Below are positions 18,483-30,612 of a DNA stretch of 64,000 nt, in pieces. Position 1 is the stretch's first letter. Each line of letters starts with the position of its first letter. Made by a program: the position numbers and the translations under genes. This DNA is from Ascidiella aspersa. Lineage: Eukaryota. The stretch is taken from NCBI GenBank assembly GCA_963924565.1, contig OZ004609.1:29698001-29762000 (forward strand). Reading direction: 5' to 3'. The notes below the pieces were generated by a model. It was not told where the DNA came from. It saw nothing but the letters and a program-made list of their open reading frames with translations, and ran no database searches.

Positions 18483-19472
18483 ATGATATACAGAAATCTA
18501 GGCAGCTCAGGCCTTCGCGTATCTTGCATTGGCCTGGGAACGTGGGCGACTTTCGCGAACCAAATTAGCGACGAGGTGGCCGAAGAACTGGTCACAATCG
18601 CGTACGAAAACGGCGTCAACTTCTTTGACACCGCGGAGGTTTACGCCGGAGGGCGGGCCGAGATACTGCTTGGGAACATCTTAAAAAAGAAGAAGTGGCG
18701 TCGTTCGAGTTTGGTCATATCGACAAAGTTATTCTGGGGTGGGAAAGCGGAAACTGAACAGGGACTGTCCAGAAAGCACATTATCGAAGGGCTGAACCTG
18801 TCATTGCAGAGACTGCAGCTCACCTATGTCGATGTTGTGTTTGCCAACAAATCAGATCCACGGACTCCTATGGAGGAAACTGTGCGTGCATTTACACAGC
18901 TCATCAACGAGGGCAAGGCAATGTACTGGGGAACATCCAGGTGGAGTCCGATGGAGATCATGGAGGCGTGTTCTGTAGCAAAACAATTGAACCTCATCGC
19001 CCCGGTCGTAGAACAAACCGAGTACAACCTCTTTGAAAGGGAAATGGTTGAGAGCCTGTTTCCGCCTCTTCATGAAAAACTCGGGATCGGATCGTTGTCA
19101 TGGTCACCACTCGCCTGCGGAACAATCACTGGAAAATACTCCCAGGGAATTCCTGCCTACTCGAGAGCAGAGCTCAAAGGTTTTGGCTGGCTAAAGGAAA
19201 AGATCCTTTCCGAAGATGGGAGAAGACAACAGGCAAAACTCAAGGAAATTGAGATTGTTGCCGACAGGCTGGGGTGTACTGTTGCCCAGTTAGCGATTGC
19301 CTGGTGCCTTCGCTATGACATAAACAGTGGTGTTATAATTGGTGCTTCTTCTACTGAGCAACTTTACGAAAATCTCAAGTCGCTGCAGTGTCTTCCAAAA
19401 CTTGTGGATCCCTCCGTGTTAAATGAAATCGATTCGATATTAGGAAACTCCCCATCAAGCAATGTAGAATGA
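18483..19472 (+). CDS. KCNAB2: Voltage-gated K+ channel beta subunit (Kv-beta, aldo-keto reductase family 6), KCNAB2-like core, 329 aa in one exon
   Basis: YRNLGxSGLRVSCxGLGTW, FDTAEVY, [33 protein letters not shown], [23 protein letters not shown], [13 protein letters not shown], QLAIAWCLR. Catalytic Asp/Tyr/Lys/Asn intact. Probably co-orthologous to KCNAB1/2/3. Confidence 0.96.
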
Positions 19473-20040: not shown

Positions 20041-20676
20041 ATGGCCGTGCGTGTGTGCATCGGAGCCATGGCGGGCTGTTTAAAGCGCGCATCCACAGCC
20101 TCTGCTGTAGTGAACGTCGGTTGTGCAAGAAAGGCATTCCTCAGTAATCAAGCAGGGGCGAAGCCGCTGTTCAAAGTAACCGACGACCCGGCCTACATTC
20201 GCGTGCGTAGCCAAAACTTCGCGCCAATCCCTATGGAGGAATCAACACCGAAGACGGGACCCTTTGCGCAGCCGACGCCGATTTTTCAGCGCCGCAGGCA
20301 CCTCAACTTTGACGGGCTCACCTACGACAAGCTGCCGGTCGTCTACGTGCGCGCGGGCTGGAACAACACCCAAGTGGCTGTGACAACGCGCGATACCACC
20401 TACTGCCTTATCTCCTGTCGCAGCGTCGGCTTCCAGAAGGCGCAGAAAAAAAGCGAGCTCGCGGGCGAGACTGTGGGCCGCACGGCAGCCGAGCGCAGCC
20501 TTCTCAAGGGCTGTCACAAGCACGTGAGGGTCGTGATCCGAGGCATTGGCCCCGGACGCAGGTCCGCACTGCGAGGTCTGGATCTCGGCGGTATGGAGAT
20601 CGCCTCAATCAGCGACCGCACCCCCATCACCAATGACTCGCTACCACAGCGGCCGAGACGCATCAGGCGTGTTTAG
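20041..20676 (+). CDS. MRPS11: Mitochondrial small ribosomal subunit protein uS11m, intronless, 211 aa
   Basis: N-terminal Arg/Ala/Ser-rich presequence; uS11 motifs VYVRAGWNNT, SCRSVGF, VRVVIRGIGPGR, ISDRTPI and a basic C-tail RPRRIRRV. Confidence 0.92.
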   Translation: MAVRVCIGAMAGCLKRASTASAVVNVGCARKAFLSNQAGAKPLFKVTDDPAYIRVRSQNFAPIPMEESTPKTGPFAQPTPIFQRRRHLNFDGLTYDKLPVVYVRAGWNNTQVAVTTRDTTYCLISCRSVGFQKAQKKSELAGETVGRTAAERSLLKGCHKHVRVVIRGIGPGRRSALRGLDLGGMEIASISDRTPITNDSLPQRPRRIRRV

Positions 20677-22348: not shown

Positions 22349-22878
22349 CTAGAGGCTCGTCTCTCGCAAAACAGCGGTCTCTGCATTTCCCGGGGCCGAA
22401 CCGCCGTCGTTGGACGACGACGCGTTAGTGTTTGCCTCCTTGTGCGCGATCACGCCGTCCAGAGTCACACCGGGTAGGGTTGGCGTCTCCGGGCGGTTGC
22501 CGCGCGCCGTCACAATGCTGCCCACCTGGCTGTACAGCTTTGCCAGCACGGCGTCGACCAGGTTTTCCTCTACAGCGACACCGCCGACTCCGCCTTCAAG
22601 CGAGTTGCGTCGCGAGCCGTGTAGAAGCTTGCGGTCGAGTTGTCTGGCCCTGGCGCGGCATCCGAACCACGAAGCAATGAGGAAGAAGCCGAGAGCCAGC
22701 ATGAAAATGCCCATTGCCATAGGCGCCGCACTTAGCTTCTTGAGGCGAGCCTGGTCCTTGCCTGTGTTGGTGCTGGCGCTGATGCCGATGCAGACGAAGA
22801 CGAGGCCGCCGAAGACCATGAGCGGCGCGAAACCGCTGGAAAGCTTGGAGCAGCGTCGCGCGCGCTCCGACTCTTGCT
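22349..22878 (-). CDS. Orphan two-TM protein, last coding exon (TM1, short loop, TM2, basic tail, C-terminal ETSL)
   Basis: Acceptor cctcccacag at 22879, phase 1; GC-rich codons; hydrophobic segments FAPLMVFGGLVFVCIGISA and AMGIFMLALGFFLIASWFGC; stop TAG at 22349. Confidence 0.85.
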
Positions 22879-22940
22879 CTGTGGGAGGCAATAAATACAT
22901 TATGGGTGACTTGGTGCATTTTAACGCTTCAAGAAGATAA

Positions 22941-23645
22941 AGTTACCAGTAGCATTTGGGCTAAGAACACTCTTAATTAAAATGAAAGACCCTAAATATT
23001 TTATAAATTTGACGACATGAGATGGCATTATAGCAAAACGTTTAAAACATCAGGAATTATGCTGATTTTTTGCACATCCTGGCCTATTTAATTTTATTGA
23101 AACAGCAGCATTCCGTTAGGACTTTCGTTACTCATGACTAGTCTTTGACTTCAACAATATAGGCATGGATTATATAGTTACCAGTAGCATTTGACACAAA
23201 ACGCACTTAAATTTTTTGTACAATTGAAGACCCTGAATACTTAAATTTGGGGAGTTTATACTTTTTTAATATCTTTTTTATACTCACATGGTGACATGAG
23301 ATGGCATATATAGCAAAGCGTTTAAAAAAGAGGAAACTATATATGCTGATTTTTTGCACTTTTTGGCCTATTGATTTTTATTGAAATAGCAGCATTTTCG
23401 TCACGGCTTTCATTATTTTGTGACTGGACTTTAACTTGAAAATTAAGTAAGGATAATGCAGTAACCGGTAGCTTTTGGCGCAGAAGGCTCTTAATTTTTT
23501 TGTAAAATGAAAGACCCTAAATATTTTAAAAATTGGCTGATTTTATACTTTTCTATTACTATTTTTTTACTCACATGGTTACATAAGATAGCATATATAG
23601 CAAAGCGTTTAAAAAGGAGCGAGAACTACGCTAATTTTTGCATAT
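22941..23645. repeat. Three diverged tandem copies (about 240-280 bp) just upstream of the last exon of the two-TM gene
   Basis: agttaccagtagcattt at about 22941, 23177 and 23460, each followed by gaaagaccctaaata, acatgagatggcat and gctgattttttgca-like blocks. Confidence 0.85.
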
Positions 23646-25860
23646 CGTAAAAGATTTATTTTTACGGAGTTTTTCTTAGATCTTTCGTGCCTTGAACATT
23701 ATAGGCAAGGATGGCTTTCTTATATTATATAAAAATACGGTGTAGGCTATACGAGGCATTTCTAAAGATACAGACTTATATTGAAAAAATGCTTAGTGAC
23801 TGCAAAATTACTTGTTAACCATCTTTTGGGCAGGGGGAATCTAAAGAATTTACACTTCCAGGTTTAACGTTTATTAAAGTACGCCATATTTTTGATTTAC
23901 ATCGATAATTCTCAAGTACTTGTCGTGTTCAGCACCATTCTATCCTGAGTTATAAACCGCGTTCTATAGGTTCATCCAATGTAATTTACGCATTTCGCAC
24001 ATCATGTTATGTTACAGGATATTACGTTTAGTTTCATCTCGAGCTGAACATGTAGTTTAGAAGGTTCACATGATTTTAAAATAATACACGATTTTATCTG
24101 AAACATATTAACTTATGCGAAGAAGAAAAATCTTCGATGTATTTTGTTATCAAGATTAAAATTGTAAATTTTCATTGGTTGGTTGATAGAAGTTACTGAT
24201 ACACTAACCACCATTTTTCAACCAGGTGGGCGTTGAAAAAAGTTATGGTTTTTCAATTCGTTCAAATTCGGCCCGGTATTAACTCATTTGTTTACTGTCG
24301 CTTTCGTATCCGTAATCGAAGTCTCTGTTATTAGAATTAGTTTAAGTAAACAATTGTATATTTTACCAGCATTTTTTATTTACCGAGATATTCATGTGAC
24401 ATTACTTAATTACCAAAATAAAGTTTTGGTTTTCATTTCTCGACCAATAGTTAATAGAAGTGAACATACTTATAAAGACTGAATGAAAAGGTTGTAACTC
24501 TACCCTAAAAAAATGTAGGCTAATATTTATTTTATCTTATCATGTTATGACATGACAGCTTTTCGTGGAGCCCCACTTAGCCTTACATACCTATCACGAA
24601 ATTCATGAATAAACTCCCTGATAAATCGCATGATTTGCATACGTCAGTTTCAGGATATTTTTAACAGCGTATTTATATTTGGAAGTTCCAAACAAAATTG
24701 GGGTTTGTGGTCCCATCTTAAAATATCAGCGTCTGGGGCGTTGTTTGTGTGTAACTAACTTATAATTACGTTATGATGATAAAACTCGGCCAATGACCAA
24801 TAATGCTGTAAATTTTTAGTCATTATTATCATAGGGTCATAGCGTATTGTCCGACATTGAACAAGCACTAAACTAACGAAAATCTTGGTGCTTACGAGAG
24901 GATTTTATTTCAGGTTTATTTCGCTTATAAAGTACATTTCGCTCAAAAGAACAAATATACCTTGATTTGCAAGACGCTAATTCGTTTTTTTTCCGATTTT
25001 GTCTGCTGCTAAAATGATTAAGCGACGTTTCATGTCGGTTTGTTCGAAATGATTTAAGTGCGTCAGCTCTACACGCAACTTTAACTGGTAATGATCACAA
25101 GGTCATTGCTGACTTGTCAATTAACCAACGTATTTCGCTGAATCTTTTATTGCTAACATATTTTAATATGCTATATCTGTACGACACGTAATCGATGCAT
25201 TAGCGATCAAAAAGCATTATTTTCATTTTTTATAAGCATAAACAAGTCTTCATGTTACACACCTAGTTTGTGTTTTATGAAGCCACTGCTTTTTAACTTA
25301 AGTGGGGTAAAGTCAAAAAGTCAAGTATACCAAAGAAAAATAACAAAAGTTGAATGAATTCGAAATTTATGCACATAAATAATTCGTTCAAAGATATATT
25401 CGCATTTAGCTGCTGTGAGTTGAACAAAGTTTTTCACAAAGCAAATTCAAAGCAGGCCTCTAAGTATTTTAGTCTATTGTCTGTATAATTAATCGTTTTG
25501 ATGTTAAAATTTAAAGCTGTTTTTCATATTACTTAGAATCAATCATGTAACGTAACTGAAAGAACGACATTTAAGATCTTTTTATAGTTATTGTTCGTTT
25601 TTTGGAAAGAATACATAACGACAGCCAGTGACGAATCTAACGAATTGTGGGTATAACTCATACGAAATAGCGTCCTACAACAATAGCTAATTTAAACATT
25701 TTTCTGAAGCTGTTTTCTGTCAATTTCCAGAATTTGTTTTTCTGTCAATTTCCAGAGTTTGCGCACTCTTGTAATCTATTTATGGGAGTTTCTGGACTCC
25801 ACTGCTTGAAAGCATTACTTCTAGCCTAAAGGCAAATTAACACTAAAACCACACAATTAC

Positions 25861-26109
25861 CGAGGTCCTTGATTTTATCCCAATGATGTCGCGTCCACTC
25901 CTGCCCGATGCTCTGCCTCCCGGAGGCTCGCGACTGGCTTCCGCTGATGCGTGGAGCGTTGAGCGCCTCCTCGGCGAGGTTGCTCTCGCGCAGAGGGATG
26001 TTGTGCATCTCGCTCACGGAGGAGGAAGTCCGGGAGAGAAAGGACACACTCCCGGAGGAAGATGTGCGCGAATGACGGCTCTCGCTCCTCGAAACCATCC
26101 GGTGCGCAT
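25861..26109 (-). CDS. Orphan two-TM protein, middle coding exon (Ser/Arg-rich)
   Basis: Strong acceptor tctctctcttcag at 26110, donor GTAATT at 25860; 249 nt, phase 1-1; GC-rich island in an AT-rich intron. Confidence 0.82.
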
Positions 26110-28942
26110 CTGAAGAGAGAGAGAAAGAGTTGAATGATTAGTGTTTTATAAGCTATGAAAAAGGGCTACAGAAAAATCAAAGATTGGGATAAAAGATGAA
26201 AGAAAGTGGTTCTGGTCGAAATTTTCTTTTGTGTGTAGGATTGGATCTCTATACGCATGAATATTAGGCAGATAAGTCTTCGAACAAACTAAATCAATGT
26301 TTTCACGGCACGCGTAAAAATTGTCAAGAGAGTTATGAATGTTGAGTGTTTTATAAGCTATGAATTTTTATCGTCAAAATCCCTTAGGGCCTCTAATTGC
26401 AAATATTTTGTAGAACACCACATTTTCTTGACTTACTCTGATTCCAAACTTCCATTGCACCGCCAACCAGGATCATTCGTTAATTCGCATTAAAAGCTAC
26501 GGCCAAGAGATAAGCAGCGAGTTCAGTATGTAAATTTTCAGAAAGCTCGCAGACCCCTGTAACCATTTTACGGCCAATTGTGGGTTCATGTGCCCCTGGT
26601 TGGGAATCCCTGTCCCTAATCTCATGTGTACACCACCATAAACTTGTTTTTTCGTTATGTTTTGTTTCAAAACCTTTTTCTATAAAAATAAAATTATCTG
26701 TTACTAATGCACTGGTTTAGTGGGATCCGTTATTGGATAAACTCTTAAATCTTATAAAACTATTCGTGTTTGTCTTTTTTTAAAGGGCTTAGTAACATGT
26801 TAATCCTTTTAGTTCCAACCGGTTTGACTTTTCAACGGAAACACGTCATAGCATAACGCTACTAAAAACAATTACGTCACAACAAAACGACTCTTACAAA
26901 CAGACTGTAAGTTTACCGAATTAAATCGTACGCCACTAAAGAGATTTACCAGATCAGTGCAAGGTACCAAATCAAACAAGACAATTCTTTCACCAAAAAG
27001 TACTAACAATAGCTAGGCCTACTGAGATTTTTATTCAAAGTCAACCAATTTTTATTTATGTACGATATAAAAAGCCATCATCGAGAAACATGACATTTCT
27101 TATTCTTTAAAATTCCATATTTTACTTAACTGCTGGAGACCAAACGCAAGTGCTTTTTAAAACTTGCACTACAAAAGTATTTATCCACAGAAACAAGAGC
27201 AGTTATGCTTTCGATATCTGCAGCCGAGCGCTTACAATGTAAATGAGGCGCAGCTCTGCTGGTCAAAAATAAATGCCAAACTAACCCATCTGGGTCGTCG
27301 CCAATTGCTCGCGCTCTCTTGTAATTATAACTTTCCATTTTGTCAATAAAAGGAGCTAGCTTTCATTGAATTCCAGCCTTTATTAATACCATCCTTATCT
27401 ATAACGAGTCTAGGGTAATATAACGGCAATTTGAAACAAAATATCGTCCTAAAAAGATTATTCTAACGAATCACTTTTTCCTTGATGTATATTAGACCCC
27501 TTGGCCGAATGTATCCGTGCATAACCTTCTTTGGCAATAGGCTAGACGCGCAGAATAAACAAATTGGCAAAACTGGTATAAGGAGCACTGCTCTATATAA
27601 TTTAAACATGCTGTAATTTCTCAACGACAGCCCCAAATTCCAAATATAACCGTTATTTTTGTATTTATGAAAAAAAAATTATGGATTTTTCGTCCTATAA
27701 AACACATAAAAACAGTAAATTACTTTCAACTCAAATTTGCAGTGCTACTAACCCAGTCCAATTGCTTTCAAACGATCAAAACAAATTAAACACCCAAAAA
27801 CATAAAGTTAAAAAAAAAATTTCAAACCAAAGTTAAAAAAAGTTCAAACCAAACTTACTTATTGTCTTACACTATTCCTTTTAAATAAGCGGTTCGCCTA
27901 TTACTTTATGTCAGATATGTGGCGTTGAATAATAATATTAATAAGAATGGATGCTGCTTGGTTTAAATGACAGCATAATCACACCTCTTTAATTATACAT
28001 TTCTATACGGACTATATTAAACAAAACCAATTAATTTATAAAAACAAAAGCATGTGGTTTCTTTCTGCAATCAACAACGAGTATACCTTGTTGCAACCAA
28101 TTGAAATTTAATTACAGGAAGTATGCGCATTATGATGGAGATTTGTAAATGCTGTTTCATATTCACAAGAACATGACCTAGTCATACAGTTTTATATATC
28201 TTTTTTACAAATTTATTGTTCTGAAAGGTTTTCTTTTTATATAGTTTAAATGATTTTATACGGCTCCGCAAAGGCTCTTGAGGTAATATTGATACGTGTG
28301 CCGTTGTTGACACAGTCATATATTGTGCATGAGTGTTTTAGTTTCCGCTGTAATTTCGAGCGTTAACCACACAACAAAACCATAATAGTACAACCGAAGT
28401 TGTTTCGTACAACAATTGTCAGTGAAGGTTACTATAAGTCATGGGTCGGGAACCTTTTACCTAAAGGAGCCATAAAAGCGGAATACTTTTGGTAGTACTT
28501 TGATAAGAGACATATAAACATGTTTTAACATCTAGTTTATGCTGAAACAAAATGATGAGTTAAATAGGGCTGTTTGTTCTGTTCTTATTTAAAAGACAGA
28601 GCATATTAAGCGCGAAAAAGTGCATTAGTTAAGTTTACGAAACTTTAATTACAGAGTGCCATGATACCAACATGACGTTTGGAACAATAAGAGATTCAAA
28701 CGGACTAACAACAACCAATAGACAAATAGGATTCACGCAAAGCTCGTATTAAAAAATAAAAAGTATAGTTTGGAAAGTGGCCATATAGCCACGTGCAGTT
28801 TTATTCACATCATGCTAGAATGATAGCTTAGCCTTATCTGCGGACAAAATTGTCTCATTTTAAGAGCCATATGGCGTCACCAAAATAGCCTCTAAGTTAA
28901 CTAATCACGCTACTAAATACGAGCACACACTTAGCAGCCCAC

Positions 28943-29402
28943 CTGGAATGCTGGTGACCGAAACCCGGTAGCCGATTCTGCTTGAACTGCTGGCTGGCAG
29001 GAACACCTCGTTGCTAACGTATTCCTGCGAGGTGCTGGTTCGCGTGGCGAACTGCAACGGCGAGTTGGCAGAGTGTGGCCTCCTACCAGAAGGCCCGACT
29101 CCGACTATGGGCGACGGTGCCCGACGGACGTAGTTCCTGCCTTCGCCCCTATCCAGCCTGTGTCCGCCCACAGGGGTGTGACGTGCGCTGGGGGCACGAC
29201 CGCTCCTGTACTTTACTTCGTACACTCTCTCAGTCGTCTGCTGATGCGGACTTCCCCCTTCTGGGAGCGAGGCGATCGAGTCTCGCAGCAGCCTGGTTTG
29301 TGACGTAGATGAAGTCGGAGAATCTGCCGAACTCTCGGCCCTAATTTCGCCCGCAAAGAAGTGCTCCCGTTCTTCGCGACGGCCATTTGCGTTTGCATCC
29401 AT
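28943..29402 (-). CDS. Orphan two-TM protein, first coding exon (MDANANGRREE…; predicted disordered)
   Basis: ATG at 29402, donor CAG|GTGGGC at 28942 (460 nt, phase 1), upstream acceptor ttgtttcgacag at 29527. The three exons sum to 1239 nt = 412 aa + stop. Confidence 0.75.
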
Positions 29403-30612
29403 AATACTGTTTGCTTTAATCTGGATTGCCGTTGTGCAGATTTGCGGTATCGTAGGTTCCTGTTGTACAGCTTTACAGTATCGTGGGTTATGTCGCCATG
29501 CTTAATTGTTTATGGACACGCTTCACCTGTCGAAACAAGTAACAGGCTTAGTCTGTTCTACAACATGTTTATTACTGGCTACGTAAGTAGACAATTTGAA
29601 TATGGCAAACAGACTACATTAAAATATTTTACAAATTGACCTTTTTGACGTCTTACAAACGTAAAAGTTTCAAATAACACAGTGTCACTAAATAACGAAT
29701 GAAGTTAAAATACATGTGAAAAGTTGTCAGATGCAATAAGGCCCTACTAACCAAGTTTTGATGAACTTTTAAACTGAATGTCATGACGCTAATTGTTACA
29801 GTTCTTACTCAATAGTTATTAAACTTCACGTTGTTGAACGATAAATAAGCAAGTTAATAAAGTTCGACAATTTATATCCCGTCGGTGTGATCGCCAGTCC
29901 AGTTATCCGGCCCTTCACGGAGAAAAAGTTTGATAACGCCTAAAATAACACATTTAAATAGTATTAGTGTCATAAACAAGTTGATAAAAAATACTTTCAA
30001 ATAGCCTTGCCTCCTCAAATTAATTTTAAGCAAATCGGTCCAAGATACGATCACTTTACAACTAAATATATTGACATCGACTGTACCAAACAATTAAGTA
30101 TTAAACCATTCTGTCTAAATTTACTAAAGCTAGCTTAATATTTCAACAATTAAATAACATTTAAAATCAAGAAAATTGTAAAAGACGTAAAACGTAGTAA
30201 AACACTCGCCAATATCGTATATTGATACCACCAATAATAACAAATCAGCAGTGTATATTAGTATACAGCCTTCTGAACCTATAGCTGCTGTACCAGTTTA
30301 AGCTGTCACAGCCTACGTCCACTTCCAGTCGTTCTATGTAGTTACACAAGAGAAGCAAATGCTGATTAACTCTGACGATCTCTGATTTTATTAAACGTGC
30401 TGGGCGCACAAAGCTGTACGGGCCAATTCGTGAAAGACATTATTTCAGTTTGACATTAAACGTAGACCTATTACTTTGTAGTGTTTAAGGAAGCAAACGG
30501 GCATATAAATTTCAAGTTGTCCACAAATACAAGATATTACCAATCACTGAGACTTAAATACTATATTGACAAACTAAACAAGACACATTTCACCAATTAA
30601 CTAATCAACAGG

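What the first reader, a model, noticed from the sequence alone, without database searches (positions are those of the whole stretch)
22349..29402. Hidden 412-aa orphan membrane protein with PIRT/TMEM100-like architecture and a PDZ ligand
Seen: three ORF fragments join through GT-AG sites, both junctions phase 1 (29402-28943, 26109-25861, 22878-22349), into one 412-aa frame. It has about 250 aa of Ser/Arg-rich low-complexity N-terminus with no signal peptide, then TM1, a loop of about 16 aa, TM2 (GIFMLALGFFLIASWFGC), a basic run (RARARQLDRK…RRNS, a PKA-type site) and terminal E-T-S-L. Known: PIRT and TMEM100 are two-TM, short-loop TRP-channel regulators with a Gly-patterned TM2 followed by a basic cytosolic cluster; x-T-x-L-COOH is a class I PDZ-binding motif. 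Inference: an undescribed ion-channel auxiliary or scaffold subunit with a much longer N-terminus than vertebrate PIRT/TMEM100.
Basis: partly seen in the sequence, partly recalled or inferred. Interest (0 to 1): 0.8.

Follow-up and report, generated by a model that had tools for sequence, protein, structure and literature searches.

The report
Tunicate two-pass membrane protein gene
The three fragments really are one expressed sea-squirt gene for a small two-helix membrane protein with a docking tail for PDZ scaffold proteins; relatives turned up only in tunicates, where four species list it as an uncharacterised gene, and its function and any tie to ion channels remain untested.

Summary
Three minus-strand exons (29402-28943, 26109-25861, 22878-22349) have GT-AG borders and are both phase 1. 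Exon GC is 0.60-0.63 against 0.32-0.34 in the introns. Spliced contigs of a public run support both junctions.

The product has a disordered Ser/Arg-rich N-terminus and a helical hairpin (TM1, 17-aa loop, TM2). A basic run RARARQLDRK, LLHGSRRNS and a terminal ETSL follow.

It is not a strict orphan. It is the single-copy orthologue of uncharacterised genes in Ciona intestinalis (LOC100182279), Ciona savignyi, Phallusia, Clavelina and Styela. The hairpin, the loop, LLHGS and the C-terminal E-T-x-[VIL] are conserved in these.

No relative outside this family was found. This covers an exhaustive profile search of 1.84 billion proteins, Pfam, PDB sequences and Foldseek.

PIRT/TMEM100 membership is not supported. 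The same genome has a true PIRT-family gene elsewhere, and Pfam's PIRT model ignores this locus. A profile-profile comparison with the tunicate PIRTs is borderline (probability 53-59%; 1 of 120 composition-preserving shuffles reached the score).

Best reading: a tunicate-restricted membrane adaptor with both termini in the cytosol, tethered to PDZ scaffolds. The channel-subunit role is untested speculation.

The parts
29403..29671 (-). 5' untranslated leader (at least this far)
   Evidence: X3 contig runs unspliced from 28943 to 29671. An in-frame stop lies upstream of ATG 29402, with no earlier in-frame ATG after it.
28943..29402 (-). Coding exon 1: 153 codons plus 1 base. Disordered Ser/Arg-rich N-terminus with conserved short motifs (SPTSSTSxTRLL, RRAPSP, SNEVFLP, YRVSVTSIP).
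   Evidence: Translation. GC 0.60. 47% identity over 92 aa to Phallusia P0030. Motif alignment with Ciona and Clavelina. X3 exon-level depth and the junction.
26110..28942 (-). Intron 1 (2833 nt, GT..AG, phase 1). It contains a dispersed repeat at about 28300-28900.
   Evidence: Joint 26109->28943 in an X3 contig. GC 0.34. DNA-run depth is raised 3-5 fold with many odd joints at 28300-28900. No tandem repeat was found.
25861..26109 (-). Coding exon 2 (249 nt): Ser-rich stretch, IPLRESNLAEEALNAPRIS, and a conserved GQEWTRHHWDKIKDL segment.
   Evidence: Translation. 78% identity to Phallusia and 58% to C. savignyi. X3 depth 60 in this bin. The three polymorphisms here are all synonymous.
22879..25860 (-). 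Intron 2 (2982 nt, GT..AG, phase 1)
   Evidence: An X3 contig ends at 25861 with a loose end equal to the reverse complement of 22878-22849. Orthologues read ...KDL-E-QESERARRC across it.
22349..22878 (-). Coding exon 3 (175 codons plus stop): hairpin domain and C-terminal tail
   Evidence: Translation. 74% identity to Phallusia. Family alignments A1 and A3. Single copy in the genome.
22772..22831 (-). TM1 (FAPLMVFGGLVFVCIGISAS), preceded by the basic RARRCSK with a juxtamembrane Cys
   Evidence: Hydropathy. AF2 helix 16-35, pLDDT about 80. F27, C29 and G31 are nearly invariant.
22724..22771 (-). Short inter-helix loop (TNTGKDQARLKKLSAA), unusually well conserved
   Evidence: N37, D41, L45 and L48 are at least 90% conserved, as is P52, the first residue of TM2.
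22658..22723 (-). TM2 (PMAMGIFMLALGFFLIASWFGC), ending in the invariant W70 and C73
   Evidence: Hydropathy. AF2 helix 42-85. M59, L66, W70 and C73 are invariant.
22601..22657 (-). Juxtamembrane basic run RARARQLDRK, the invariant LLHGS, and RRNS (a basophilic-kinase consensus)
   Evidence: Net charge +6. L85, H86, G87 and S88 are invariant. RR[NGS]S is kept in the named ascidians but lost in some clades.
22517..22573 (-). Predicted cytosolic helix (VEENLVDAVLAKLYSQVGS) with the conserved K113
   Evidence: AF2 helix 102-120 at low pLDDT. K113 was invariant in the first 14-sequence alignment. Its hydrophobic moment is low, so it is not clearly amphipathic.
22352..22363 (-). C-terminal E-T-S-L, a class I PDZ-ligand consensus (x-[ST]-x-hydrophobic-COOH)
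   Evidence: 20 of the 33 stored family entries, fragments and near-duplicates included, end in a class I motif (E-T-x-[VIL]), among them all five named species. The motif is absent in two or three divergent clades.

Best explanation
This is a real, expressed, single-copy gene with three coding exons on the minus strand. It is the orthologue of the uncharacterised Ciona gene LOC100182279 and belongs to a protein family found only in tunicates.

The product has about 250 residues of disordered, Ser/Arg-rich and probably phosphorylated cytosolic N-terminus. This carries a few conserved short linear motifs. It has no signal peptide, so TM1 should insert as a signal anchor with the N-terminus inside. 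A conserved 17-residue loop faces the outside or the lumen, and TM2 brings the chain back. The basic juxtamembrane helix, the invariant LLHGS, the RRNS site and the free C-terminal ETSL are then all cytosolic.

Inferred mechanism: it acts as a membrane adaptor or regulatory subunit. Its tail is held by a class I PDZ scaffold (Dlg/PSD-95-, MAGI- or NHERF-type). Its Gly/small-residue-rich hairpin and conserved loop pack against a partner membrane protein. The basic run contacts acidic lipids, and phosphorylation (RRNS and the Ser-rich N-terminus) tunes these contacts.

Shown here: the gene model, its transcription and splicing, the conservation pattern, and the absence of detectable relatives outside the family. 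Inferred: the topology, PDZ binding, lipid contact, phosphorylation, and the nature of the partner.
For: - Exon borders and frames.
- Exon/intron GC contrast and two hydrophobic segments.
- Spliced contigs for junction 1, a matching loose end for junction 2, exon-only depth in X3, and an unspliced leader.
- In-frame stop upstream of the ATG.
- Orthologues in five named ascidians covering all three exons and both junctions.
- Single copy in the genome.
- Invariant hairpin, loop and LLHGS residues.
- C-terminal E-T-x-[VIL] kept across clades.
- AF2 model with a helical hairpin, TM2 continuing through the basic run, and a disordered tail.
- The Atlas model of the C. savignyi orthologue is mostly low-confidence, which fits disorder.
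- Net charge +6 after TM2.
- No other family claims it: Pfam, PDB sequences, Foldseek, an exhaustive profile search with only 14 hits, all in the family, and a word search at E<=10 with 19 hits, all in the family.
Against: - There is no protein-level, localisation or interaction evidence.
- X3 is not on record as RNA. I infer it is from its exon-only depth and spliced contigs. The one declared RNA run, X5, gave only 20 reads, mostly intronic.
- The loop carries net charge +3, so the positive-inside rule alone does not fix the topology.
- The PDZ-type end and RRNS are missing in some family clades, so they are not indispensable to the fold's function.
- A terminal consensus motif is common and does not prove PDZ binding.
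- The helix at residues 102-120 is modelled at low confidence.
Confidence: 0.6

Rival explanations
1. It is a very divergent member of a PIRT/TMEM100-type superfamily of two-helix regulators. It would then work like PIRT: the polybasic stretch after TM2 binds PIP2, and the hairpin docks on TRP or other channels.
For: - The architecture matches the one reported for human PIRT (PMC6773951, read): an unstructured N-terminus, two TM helices with a short loop, a polybasic C-terminal helix, and both termini inside.
- hhalign of the family against the tunicate PIRT alignment aligns TM1 with TM1 and TM2 with TM2. Probability is 53-59% and the score is 38.
- Reversed controls score 25. Within-TM column shuffles average 24 (sd 5.5), and only 1 of 120 reaches the real score.
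- Protein-language-model neighbours of the C. savignyi orthologue include TMEM174 (0.82-0.84), TMEM100 (0.80-0.83) and PIRT (0.80-0.81).
- The tunicate PIRT orthologues also carry a long N-terminus.
Against: - No family member matches Pfam PIRT or TMEM100 at E<=10.
- The PIRT model scanned over the whole genome finds a true PIRT gene at G000:C3:18521018-18521230 (57 bits), but this locus is not even among its candidates.
- BLASTP of exon 3 against that PIRT gives E>1.
- The signature residues differ: PIRT has YYRKAI...GPICLAIGLL...WIPIIKTKLKR, while this family has RRCSKLSSGF...TNTGKD...WFGCRxRAR..LLHGS.
- The hhalign signal rests mainly on a GG..F..G pattern in TM1.
- Atlas scores of about 0.8 are reached by a third of shuffled proteins.
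Confidence: 0.15
2. It is a trafficking or endomembrane hairpin protein rather than a cell-surface adaptor. The ETSL end would then serve PDZ-dependent sorting (GOPC/PIST- or SNX27-type). The RxR-rich run after TM2 would serve ER retention and release.
For: - The conserved R-x-R-A-R directly after TM2 and the conserved C-terminal motif.
- A Neurensin-containing cluster appears among the weak language-model neighbours.
- No signal peptide and no N-glycosylation sequon in the loop (direct reading).
Against: - The RxR run lies immediately at the membrane, where such signals usually do not work (general knowledge, not tested here).
- Nothing here measures localisation.
- The well-conserved exoplasmic loop suggests a specific contact on the far side of the membrane.
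Confidence: 0.2
3. The model is an artefact: chance ORFs, a pseudogene or a non-coding transcript.
For: Very low coverage in the one declared RNA-seq run. Exon 1 is poorly conserved at the level of whole-sequence BLAST against Ciona and Clavelina.
Against: - Spliced contigs at exactly the predicted junctions.
- Orthologous proteins with the same junction residues.
- Synonymous-only polymorphism in exon 2.
- Strong exon/intron GC contrast.
- An intact frame of 412 codons.
Confidence: 0.02

Closest known systems
Uncharacterised ascidian proteins: Ciona intestinalis LOC100182279 (XP_002120998.1, 347 aa), its Phallusia mammillata orthologue (391 aa), Ciona savignyi H2ZIA4, Clavelina lepadiformis LOC143449490 and Styela clava LOC120347850
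   Same: True orthologues. Identity to Phallusia is 74% (exon 3), 78% (exon 2) and 47% (the conserved part of exon 1). They share the junction residues, the hairpin, the loop, LLHGSRRNS and the E-T-x-[VIL] end.
   Different: The N-terminal disordered part varies in length and sequence. The window ends in L where most have V or I. None has a described function, and no paper mentioning LOC100182279 was found.
PIRT (Pfam PF15099) and TMEM100 (PF16311), vertebrate two-TM regulators of TRP channels
   Same: A disordered N-terminus, a two-helix hairpin with a short loop, both termini cytosolic, and a basic stretch right after TM2 (PMC6773951 and PMC10077888). Profile-profile similarity in the hairpin is weak.
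   Different: There is no HMM match. The genome has its own true PIRT gene. This protein has a roughly 100-residue tail after the hairpin, ending in a PDZ-type motif. It also has an invariant LLHGS and a conserved loop, which the tunicate PIRT alignment lacks.
TMEM88, a two-TM protein that binds the Dishevelled PDZ domain through its C-terminal VWV
   Same: The same design principle: a small two-pass protein whose free cytosolic C-terminus docks on a PDZ domain (PMC7339227 and PMC6700443, listed).
   Different: No sequence relationship was detected: no Pfam family matched. The ligand class differs (E-T-S-L is class I, not VWV). The N-terminus here is much longer.
TMEM174, TMEM215 and Neurensin-type small hairpin proteins
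   Same: They appear as weak language-model look-alikes of the hairpin half of the C. savignyi orthologue (0.78-0.84).
   Different: The scores are in the range shuffled proteins reach. There is no HMM match, and a TMEM174 scan of the genome gives only E=3.8 at another locus.

Membership tests
Tunicate LOC100182279 family (unnamed, no Pfam model) | Significant full-length similarity to the named orthologues, covering all three exons | tested here: met
   Against Phallusia P0030: exon 3 E=6e-89, exon 2 E=8e-31, exon 1 E=3e-15. Family profile hits run from 1e-117 to 1e-42. In the tree the window groups with Phallusia.
Tunicate LOC100182279 family (unnamed, no Pfam model) | Signature residues: RRCSKLSSGFAPLM-FGGLVF-CIG, the TNTGKD loop, WFGC-RxRA, LLHGS, and the E-T-x-[VIL] end | tested here: met
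   All are present in the exon 3 translation and are invariant or nearly invariant in A1/A3.
PIRT (PF15099) | Match to the family HMM at or above its gathering score (30.6 bits) | tested here: not met
   No match at E<=10 for the window exons or for 21 relatives. The genome-wide scan hits another locus at 57 bits, not this one.
PIRT (PF15099) | Two TM helices, a short loop, cytosolic termini and a disordered N-terminus | tested here: met
   Hydropathy and the AF2 model. This is a prediction only. The PIRT description is from PMC6773951.
PIRT (PF15099) | Polybasic C-terminal helix that binds PIP2 and the channel's S1-S4 domain | not testable with these tools
   A basic run (net +6) follows TM2. 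Binding would need experiments.
PIRT (PF15099) | Profile-profile homology to bona fide (tunicate) PIRT proteins | tested here: inconclusive
   hhalign probability 53-59%, score 38. Reversed controls score 25. 1 of 120 within-TM shuffles reaches the real score.
TMEM100 (PF16311) | Match to the family HMM | tested here: not met
   No match at E<=10. There is no match anywhere in the genome.
TMEM200 / DUF2371 (PF10177) | Match to the family HMM | tested here: not met
   No match in the proteins or in the genome. The control genomes gave no hit either, so the genome scan is weak evidence.
Class I PDZ-ligand-bearing membrane proteins (a functional class, not a homology family) | Free C-terminus matching x-[S/T]-x-hydrophobic, on the cytosolic side | tested here: met
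   The protein ends in E-T-S-L followed by a stop. The motif is conserved as E-T-x-[VIL] in most clades. The cytosolic location is inferred from the topology.
Class I PDZ-ligand-bearing membrane proteins (a functional class, not a homology family) | Demonstrated binding to a PDZ domain | not testable with these tools
   Needs a pull-down, a peptide array or a two-hybrid assay.

The most novel reading that the evidence does not exclude
The family is the tunicate branch of a wider, so far unrecognised bilaterian superfamily of two-helix regulatory subunits. That superfamily would unite PIRT, TMEM100, TMEM174 and the unnamed arthropod and mollusc clusters that the language-model search ranked highest (0.87-0.88, 180-187 shared features). 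In tunicates this member would have gained a PDZ-anchored tail and would act as a scaffold-tethered auxiliary subunit of a channel or receptor.
Probability: 0.12. Interest if true: 0.6.

Novelty: new variant of a known kind. Interest (0 to 1): 0.35.

Why it matters
Tunicates are the closest living relatives of vertebrates. This family is conserved across named species of the three traditional ascidian orders, is single-copy here, and its hairpin, loop and tail are conserved in a way that suggests selection, yet it has no name, no Pfam model and no literature. A small two-pass protein with a conserved PDZ docking end is the typical design of regulators that place or tune channels and receptors at synapses and junctions. 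It is therefore a reasonable knock-out or tagging target in Ciona, where the orthologue LOC100182279 is directly accessible.

The work also shows that tunicates have a genuine PIRT orthologue with a long N-terminus. That sets the right comparison for any claim about PIRT-like genes in this lineage.

As it stands, the finding is a well-read but ordinary lineage-specific membrane protein gene. It is not a demonstrated new mechanism.

Tried and rejected
- Pfam scans of the three exon translations, 13 relatives and 8 full-length orthologues gave only sub-threshold hits typical of hydrophobic segments (Tetraspanin, DUF981, Yip1). I rejected these as composition effects.
- A PDB sequence search with the family profile found nothing at E<=10.
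- AF2 followed by Foldseek against the PDB gave only unspecific helical hairpins, with no hit at E<=0.001.
- TMEM200/DUF2371 was a lead from memory (a similar pre-TM1 motif). It has no HMM support in the proteins or the genome, so I dropped it.
- The TMEM100 and TMEM174 genome scans gave nothing at this locus.
- The ESM Atlas could not read the window's own sequence, so I used the stored C. savignyi orthologue instead. The Atlas returns no identifiers, so its arthropod and mollusc look-alikes could not be tested.
I therefore could not check the source organisms of the unnamed relatives, intron positions in other species, or synteny with the Kv-beta neighbour.
- Read laying is limited to 6000 letters and one call. 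Junction 2 was therefore seen only through a loose end, not as a joint inside the stretch.
- The joined 412-aa protein was never assembled, searched or folded.
- Literature searches for LOC100182279 and for ascidian two-TM PDZ proteins found nothing relevant.
- The search of earlier findings returned nothing.
- The helix at residues 102-120 was tested for amphipathicity. Its hydrophobic moment is low, so I do not call it amphipathic.

Full report

Yes. On the minus strand, the stretch 29402-28943 opens with ATG and runs 153 codons plus one base to a GT. The stretch 26109-25861 is preceded by a polypyrimidine tract and AG, and is followed by GTAATT. The stretch 22878-22349 is preceded by CCCACAG and ends in TAG. 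Both junctions are phase 1, and the split codons read GAT and GAG. The total is 153+1+82+1+175 = 412 residues.

The exons have GC 0.60-0.63 and the introns 0.32-0.34. The joined protein was never built, searched or folded.

**2. Transcription and splicing**

One public run of the same organism (X3) is not on record as RNA, but it covers the exons only and carries spliced contigs. It shows three things:
- A contig joint 26109->28943, with ends CT..AC on the plus strand, which is GT..AG on the minus strand.
- A 3115-nt contig that stops at 25861. Its 30 loose letters are the exact reverse complement of the first 30 bases of exon 3 (compare).
- A contig that runs unspliced from 28943 to 29671.

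In that leader the reading frame has a stop upstream of ATG 29402, with no earlier in-frame ATG after it. Two DNA-like runs (X1, X2) cover exons and introns evenly.

The three differences they show inside exon 2 (25883, 25889, 25892) all fall on third codon positions and are synonymous by my reading. The introns carry dozens of substitutions and indels.

The declared RNA-seq run X5 gave only 20 reads, so expression in that sample is low. Because read laying takes 6000 letters and one call, junction 2 is supported by the loose end and by orthologues, not by a joint inside the stretch.

**3. What the protein looks like**

- Exons 1 and 2 are Ser- and Arg-rich (16%/13% and 24%/12%). There is no hydrophobic N-terminal segment.
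- Exon 3 holds two hydrophobic segments, at residues about 16-35 and 52-73, separated by a 17-residue loop.
- After TM2 come RARARQLDRK (net +6 over 19 residues), LLHGS, RRNS, a predicted helix, a low-complexity stretch and the terminal ETSL.
- AlphaFold2 with the family alignment gives a helical hairpin. TM2 continues as a helix through the basic run to residue 85. There is a further helix at 102-120 and a disordered tail. pLDDT is about 80-89 in the hairpin and 61 overall.

There is no signal peptide and a roughly 250-residue N-terminus, so the simplest topology puts both ends in the cytosol. The loop is also net positive (+3), so this remains a prediction.

**4. Relatives**

- A word-based search with exon 3 found 13 relatives, including Styela clava LOC120347850.
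- An exhaustive profile search of 1.84 billion representative proteins found 14 proteins, all with E<=1e-12 and all belonging to this family.
- A second search with a full-length alignment at E<=10 found 19, again all from the family. It added Ciona intestinalis LOC100182279 and its Phallusia mammillata orthologue.
- Cluster look-up named Clavelina lepadiformis and Ciona savignyi H2ZIA4.

The Phallusia protein matches exon 3 at 74%, exon 2 at 78% and the second half of exon 1 at 47%. It reads ...RVSVTSIP-D... and ...KDL-E-QESERARRC... across the two junctions.

A local alignment of the N-termini shows small conserved islands in an otherwise fast-evolving region: SP[ST]SS.S.T[RK]LL, RR.PSP, [DE]Y.S[NS][DE]VFLP and YR.S..S[IL].

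The gene is single-copy in its 308-Mb genome. In a tree of the hairpin-plus-tail region, the window groups with Phallusia.

The named species represent the three traditional ascidian orders (my own taxonomic knowledge).

**5. Conservation pattern**

- Invariant or nearly invariant residues cluster in TM1 (F27, C29, G31), the loop (N37, D41, L45, L48), TM2 (P52, G56, M59, L66, W70, C73), R76 and LLHGS.
- 20 of the 33 stored family entries (fragments and near-duplicates included) end in a class I motif, E-T-x-[VIL], including all named species. Two or three divergent clades lack it.
- RR[NGS]S after LLHGS is kept in the named ascidians and lost in other clades.
- Cysteines flank both helices on the presumed cytosolic side (RRCSK before TM1, WFGC after TM2). 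This is the usual setting for palmitoylation; I offer that as an inference only.

**6. Is it a member of a known family?**

No Pfam family matches any exon or any of 21 relatives beyond weak hits typical of hydrophobic segments. The PDB sequence search and Foldseek are both blank.

- Pfam PIRT scanned over the genome hits G000:C3:18521018-18521230 at 57 bits, inside a 234-aa open frame. That frame has a long N-terminus, a hairpin and IIKTKLKRK.
- This PIRT gene has orthologues in Phallusia, Ciona (LOC104266546) and Clavelina.
- The PIRT scan did not list the window's locus among its four candidates, and the TMEM100 scan found nothing at all.
- BLASTP of exon 3 against the PIRT-like protein is at noise level.

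A profile-profile comparison of the two tunicate families does align TM1 with TM1 and TM2 with TM2. The probability is 53-59% and the score 38. Reversed profiles score 25. Of 120 shuffles of columns within the PIRT transmembrane segments (mean 24, sd 5.5), one reached the real score. That is a weak signal, roughly p = 0.01, resting largely on a GG..F..G pattern.

The language-model neighbours of the C. savignyi orthologue include TMEM174, TMEM100 and PIRT at 0.80-0.84, a level that shuffled proteins often reach. They also include unnamed arthropod and mollusc clusters at 0.87-0.88, which I could not retrieve.

My conclusion is that the resemblance to PIRT/TMEM100 is real at the level of architecture (PMC6773951; PMC10077888). 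Membership failed the HMM test, and remote homology stays open at about 15%.

**7. How it most likely works**

The conserved free C-terminus of the x-T-x-hydrophobic type is the textbook class I PDZ ligand (established knowledge). The most likely mechanism is therefore a two-pass adaptor whose tail is held by a PDZ scaffold, while its hairpin and conserved loop contact a partner membrane protein. The basic juxtamembrane helix would sit on acidic lipids, and phosphorylation would act as a switch.

TMEM88 is a known example of a two-TM protein that works through a C-terminal PDZ ligand (PMC7339227 and PMC6700443), although it is unrelated in sequence. None of the binding steps is shown here.

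A trafficking or endomembrane role is the main rival (about 20%). The Kv-beta gene 2.9 kb away is noted but is not evidence in a eukaryotic genome.

**8. Novelty and verdict**

The gene model is correct and expressed. Its family is already catalogued in four named species as 'uncharacterised' gene models. It has no Pfam model, and the literature searches run here found no paper on it.

I rate it a new variant of a known kind: small hairpin adaptors with a PDZ tail. Interest is moderate to low unless the superfamily link or a partner is shown.

- The Atlas could not read new sequences.

Noticed in passing
window 18483-19472 (+): An uninterrupted 329-aa open frame is a clear orthologue of the voltage-gated potassium channel beta-2 subunit core (PDB 6ebk/2a79, E=2.6e-157; Pfam Aldo_ket_red). 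It aligns to residues 38-362 of the 367-aa PDB chain, so the variable N-terminus would need an upstream exon. The whole core is intron-free here. It lies 2.9 kb from the 3' end of the gene under study.
   Followed up: partly
window 20041-20676 (+): A single-exon 211-aa frame with a Ribosomal_S11 domain (E=1.3e-15), probably the mitochondrial S11. It is convergent with the gene under study. The 3115-nt X3 contig that ends in exon 2 has 2908 letters beyond it. If collinear, it would reach about 19971, suggesting overlapping convergent 3' ends assembled into one contig (inference).
   Followed up: partly
window about 28300-28900 (inside intron 1): The DNA-like runs show 3-5 fold higher depth, and many short contigs with odd joints and loose ends. 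This indicates a dispersed repeat. Tandem Repeats Finder found no array there.
   Followed up: partly
L002 1036-1740 (+) = G000:C3:18520553-18521257: A genuine PIRT-family gene of this tunicate (Pfam PF15099, 56-57 bits). It has a roughly 165-aa disordered N-terminus before the hairpin, the basic IIKTKLKRK after TM2, and a conserved ...RTFSL end. Orthologues exist in Phallusia, Ciona intestinalis (LOC104266546) and Clavelina. PIRT is therefore not vertebrate-only.
   Followed up: yes
L003 (G000:C2:17897263-17897451, -) and L004 (G000:C6:3836176-3836376, -): Weak sub-threshold matches to the PIRT model (E=0.31 in a 328-aa open frame; E=1.35). These may be further two-helix hairpin genes of this genome. 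I did not look at them.
   Followed up: no
window 25990-26007 (-), exon 2, and the Phallusia orthologue P0030 residues 187-192: Exon 2 contains IPLRESNL, and Phallusia has LRETSL at the same place. This is nearly the same hexapeptide as the window protein's own C-terminal LRETSL. It may be chance or an internal copy of the tail motif.
   Followed up: no
window 29403-29600 (-): The leader holds two very short upstream ORFs (ATG TTG TAG and ATG GCG ACA TAA). An AG sits 18 bases before the start codon and could be a trans-splice acceptor, as is common in ascidians. This could not be tested with the reads at hand.
   Followed up: no
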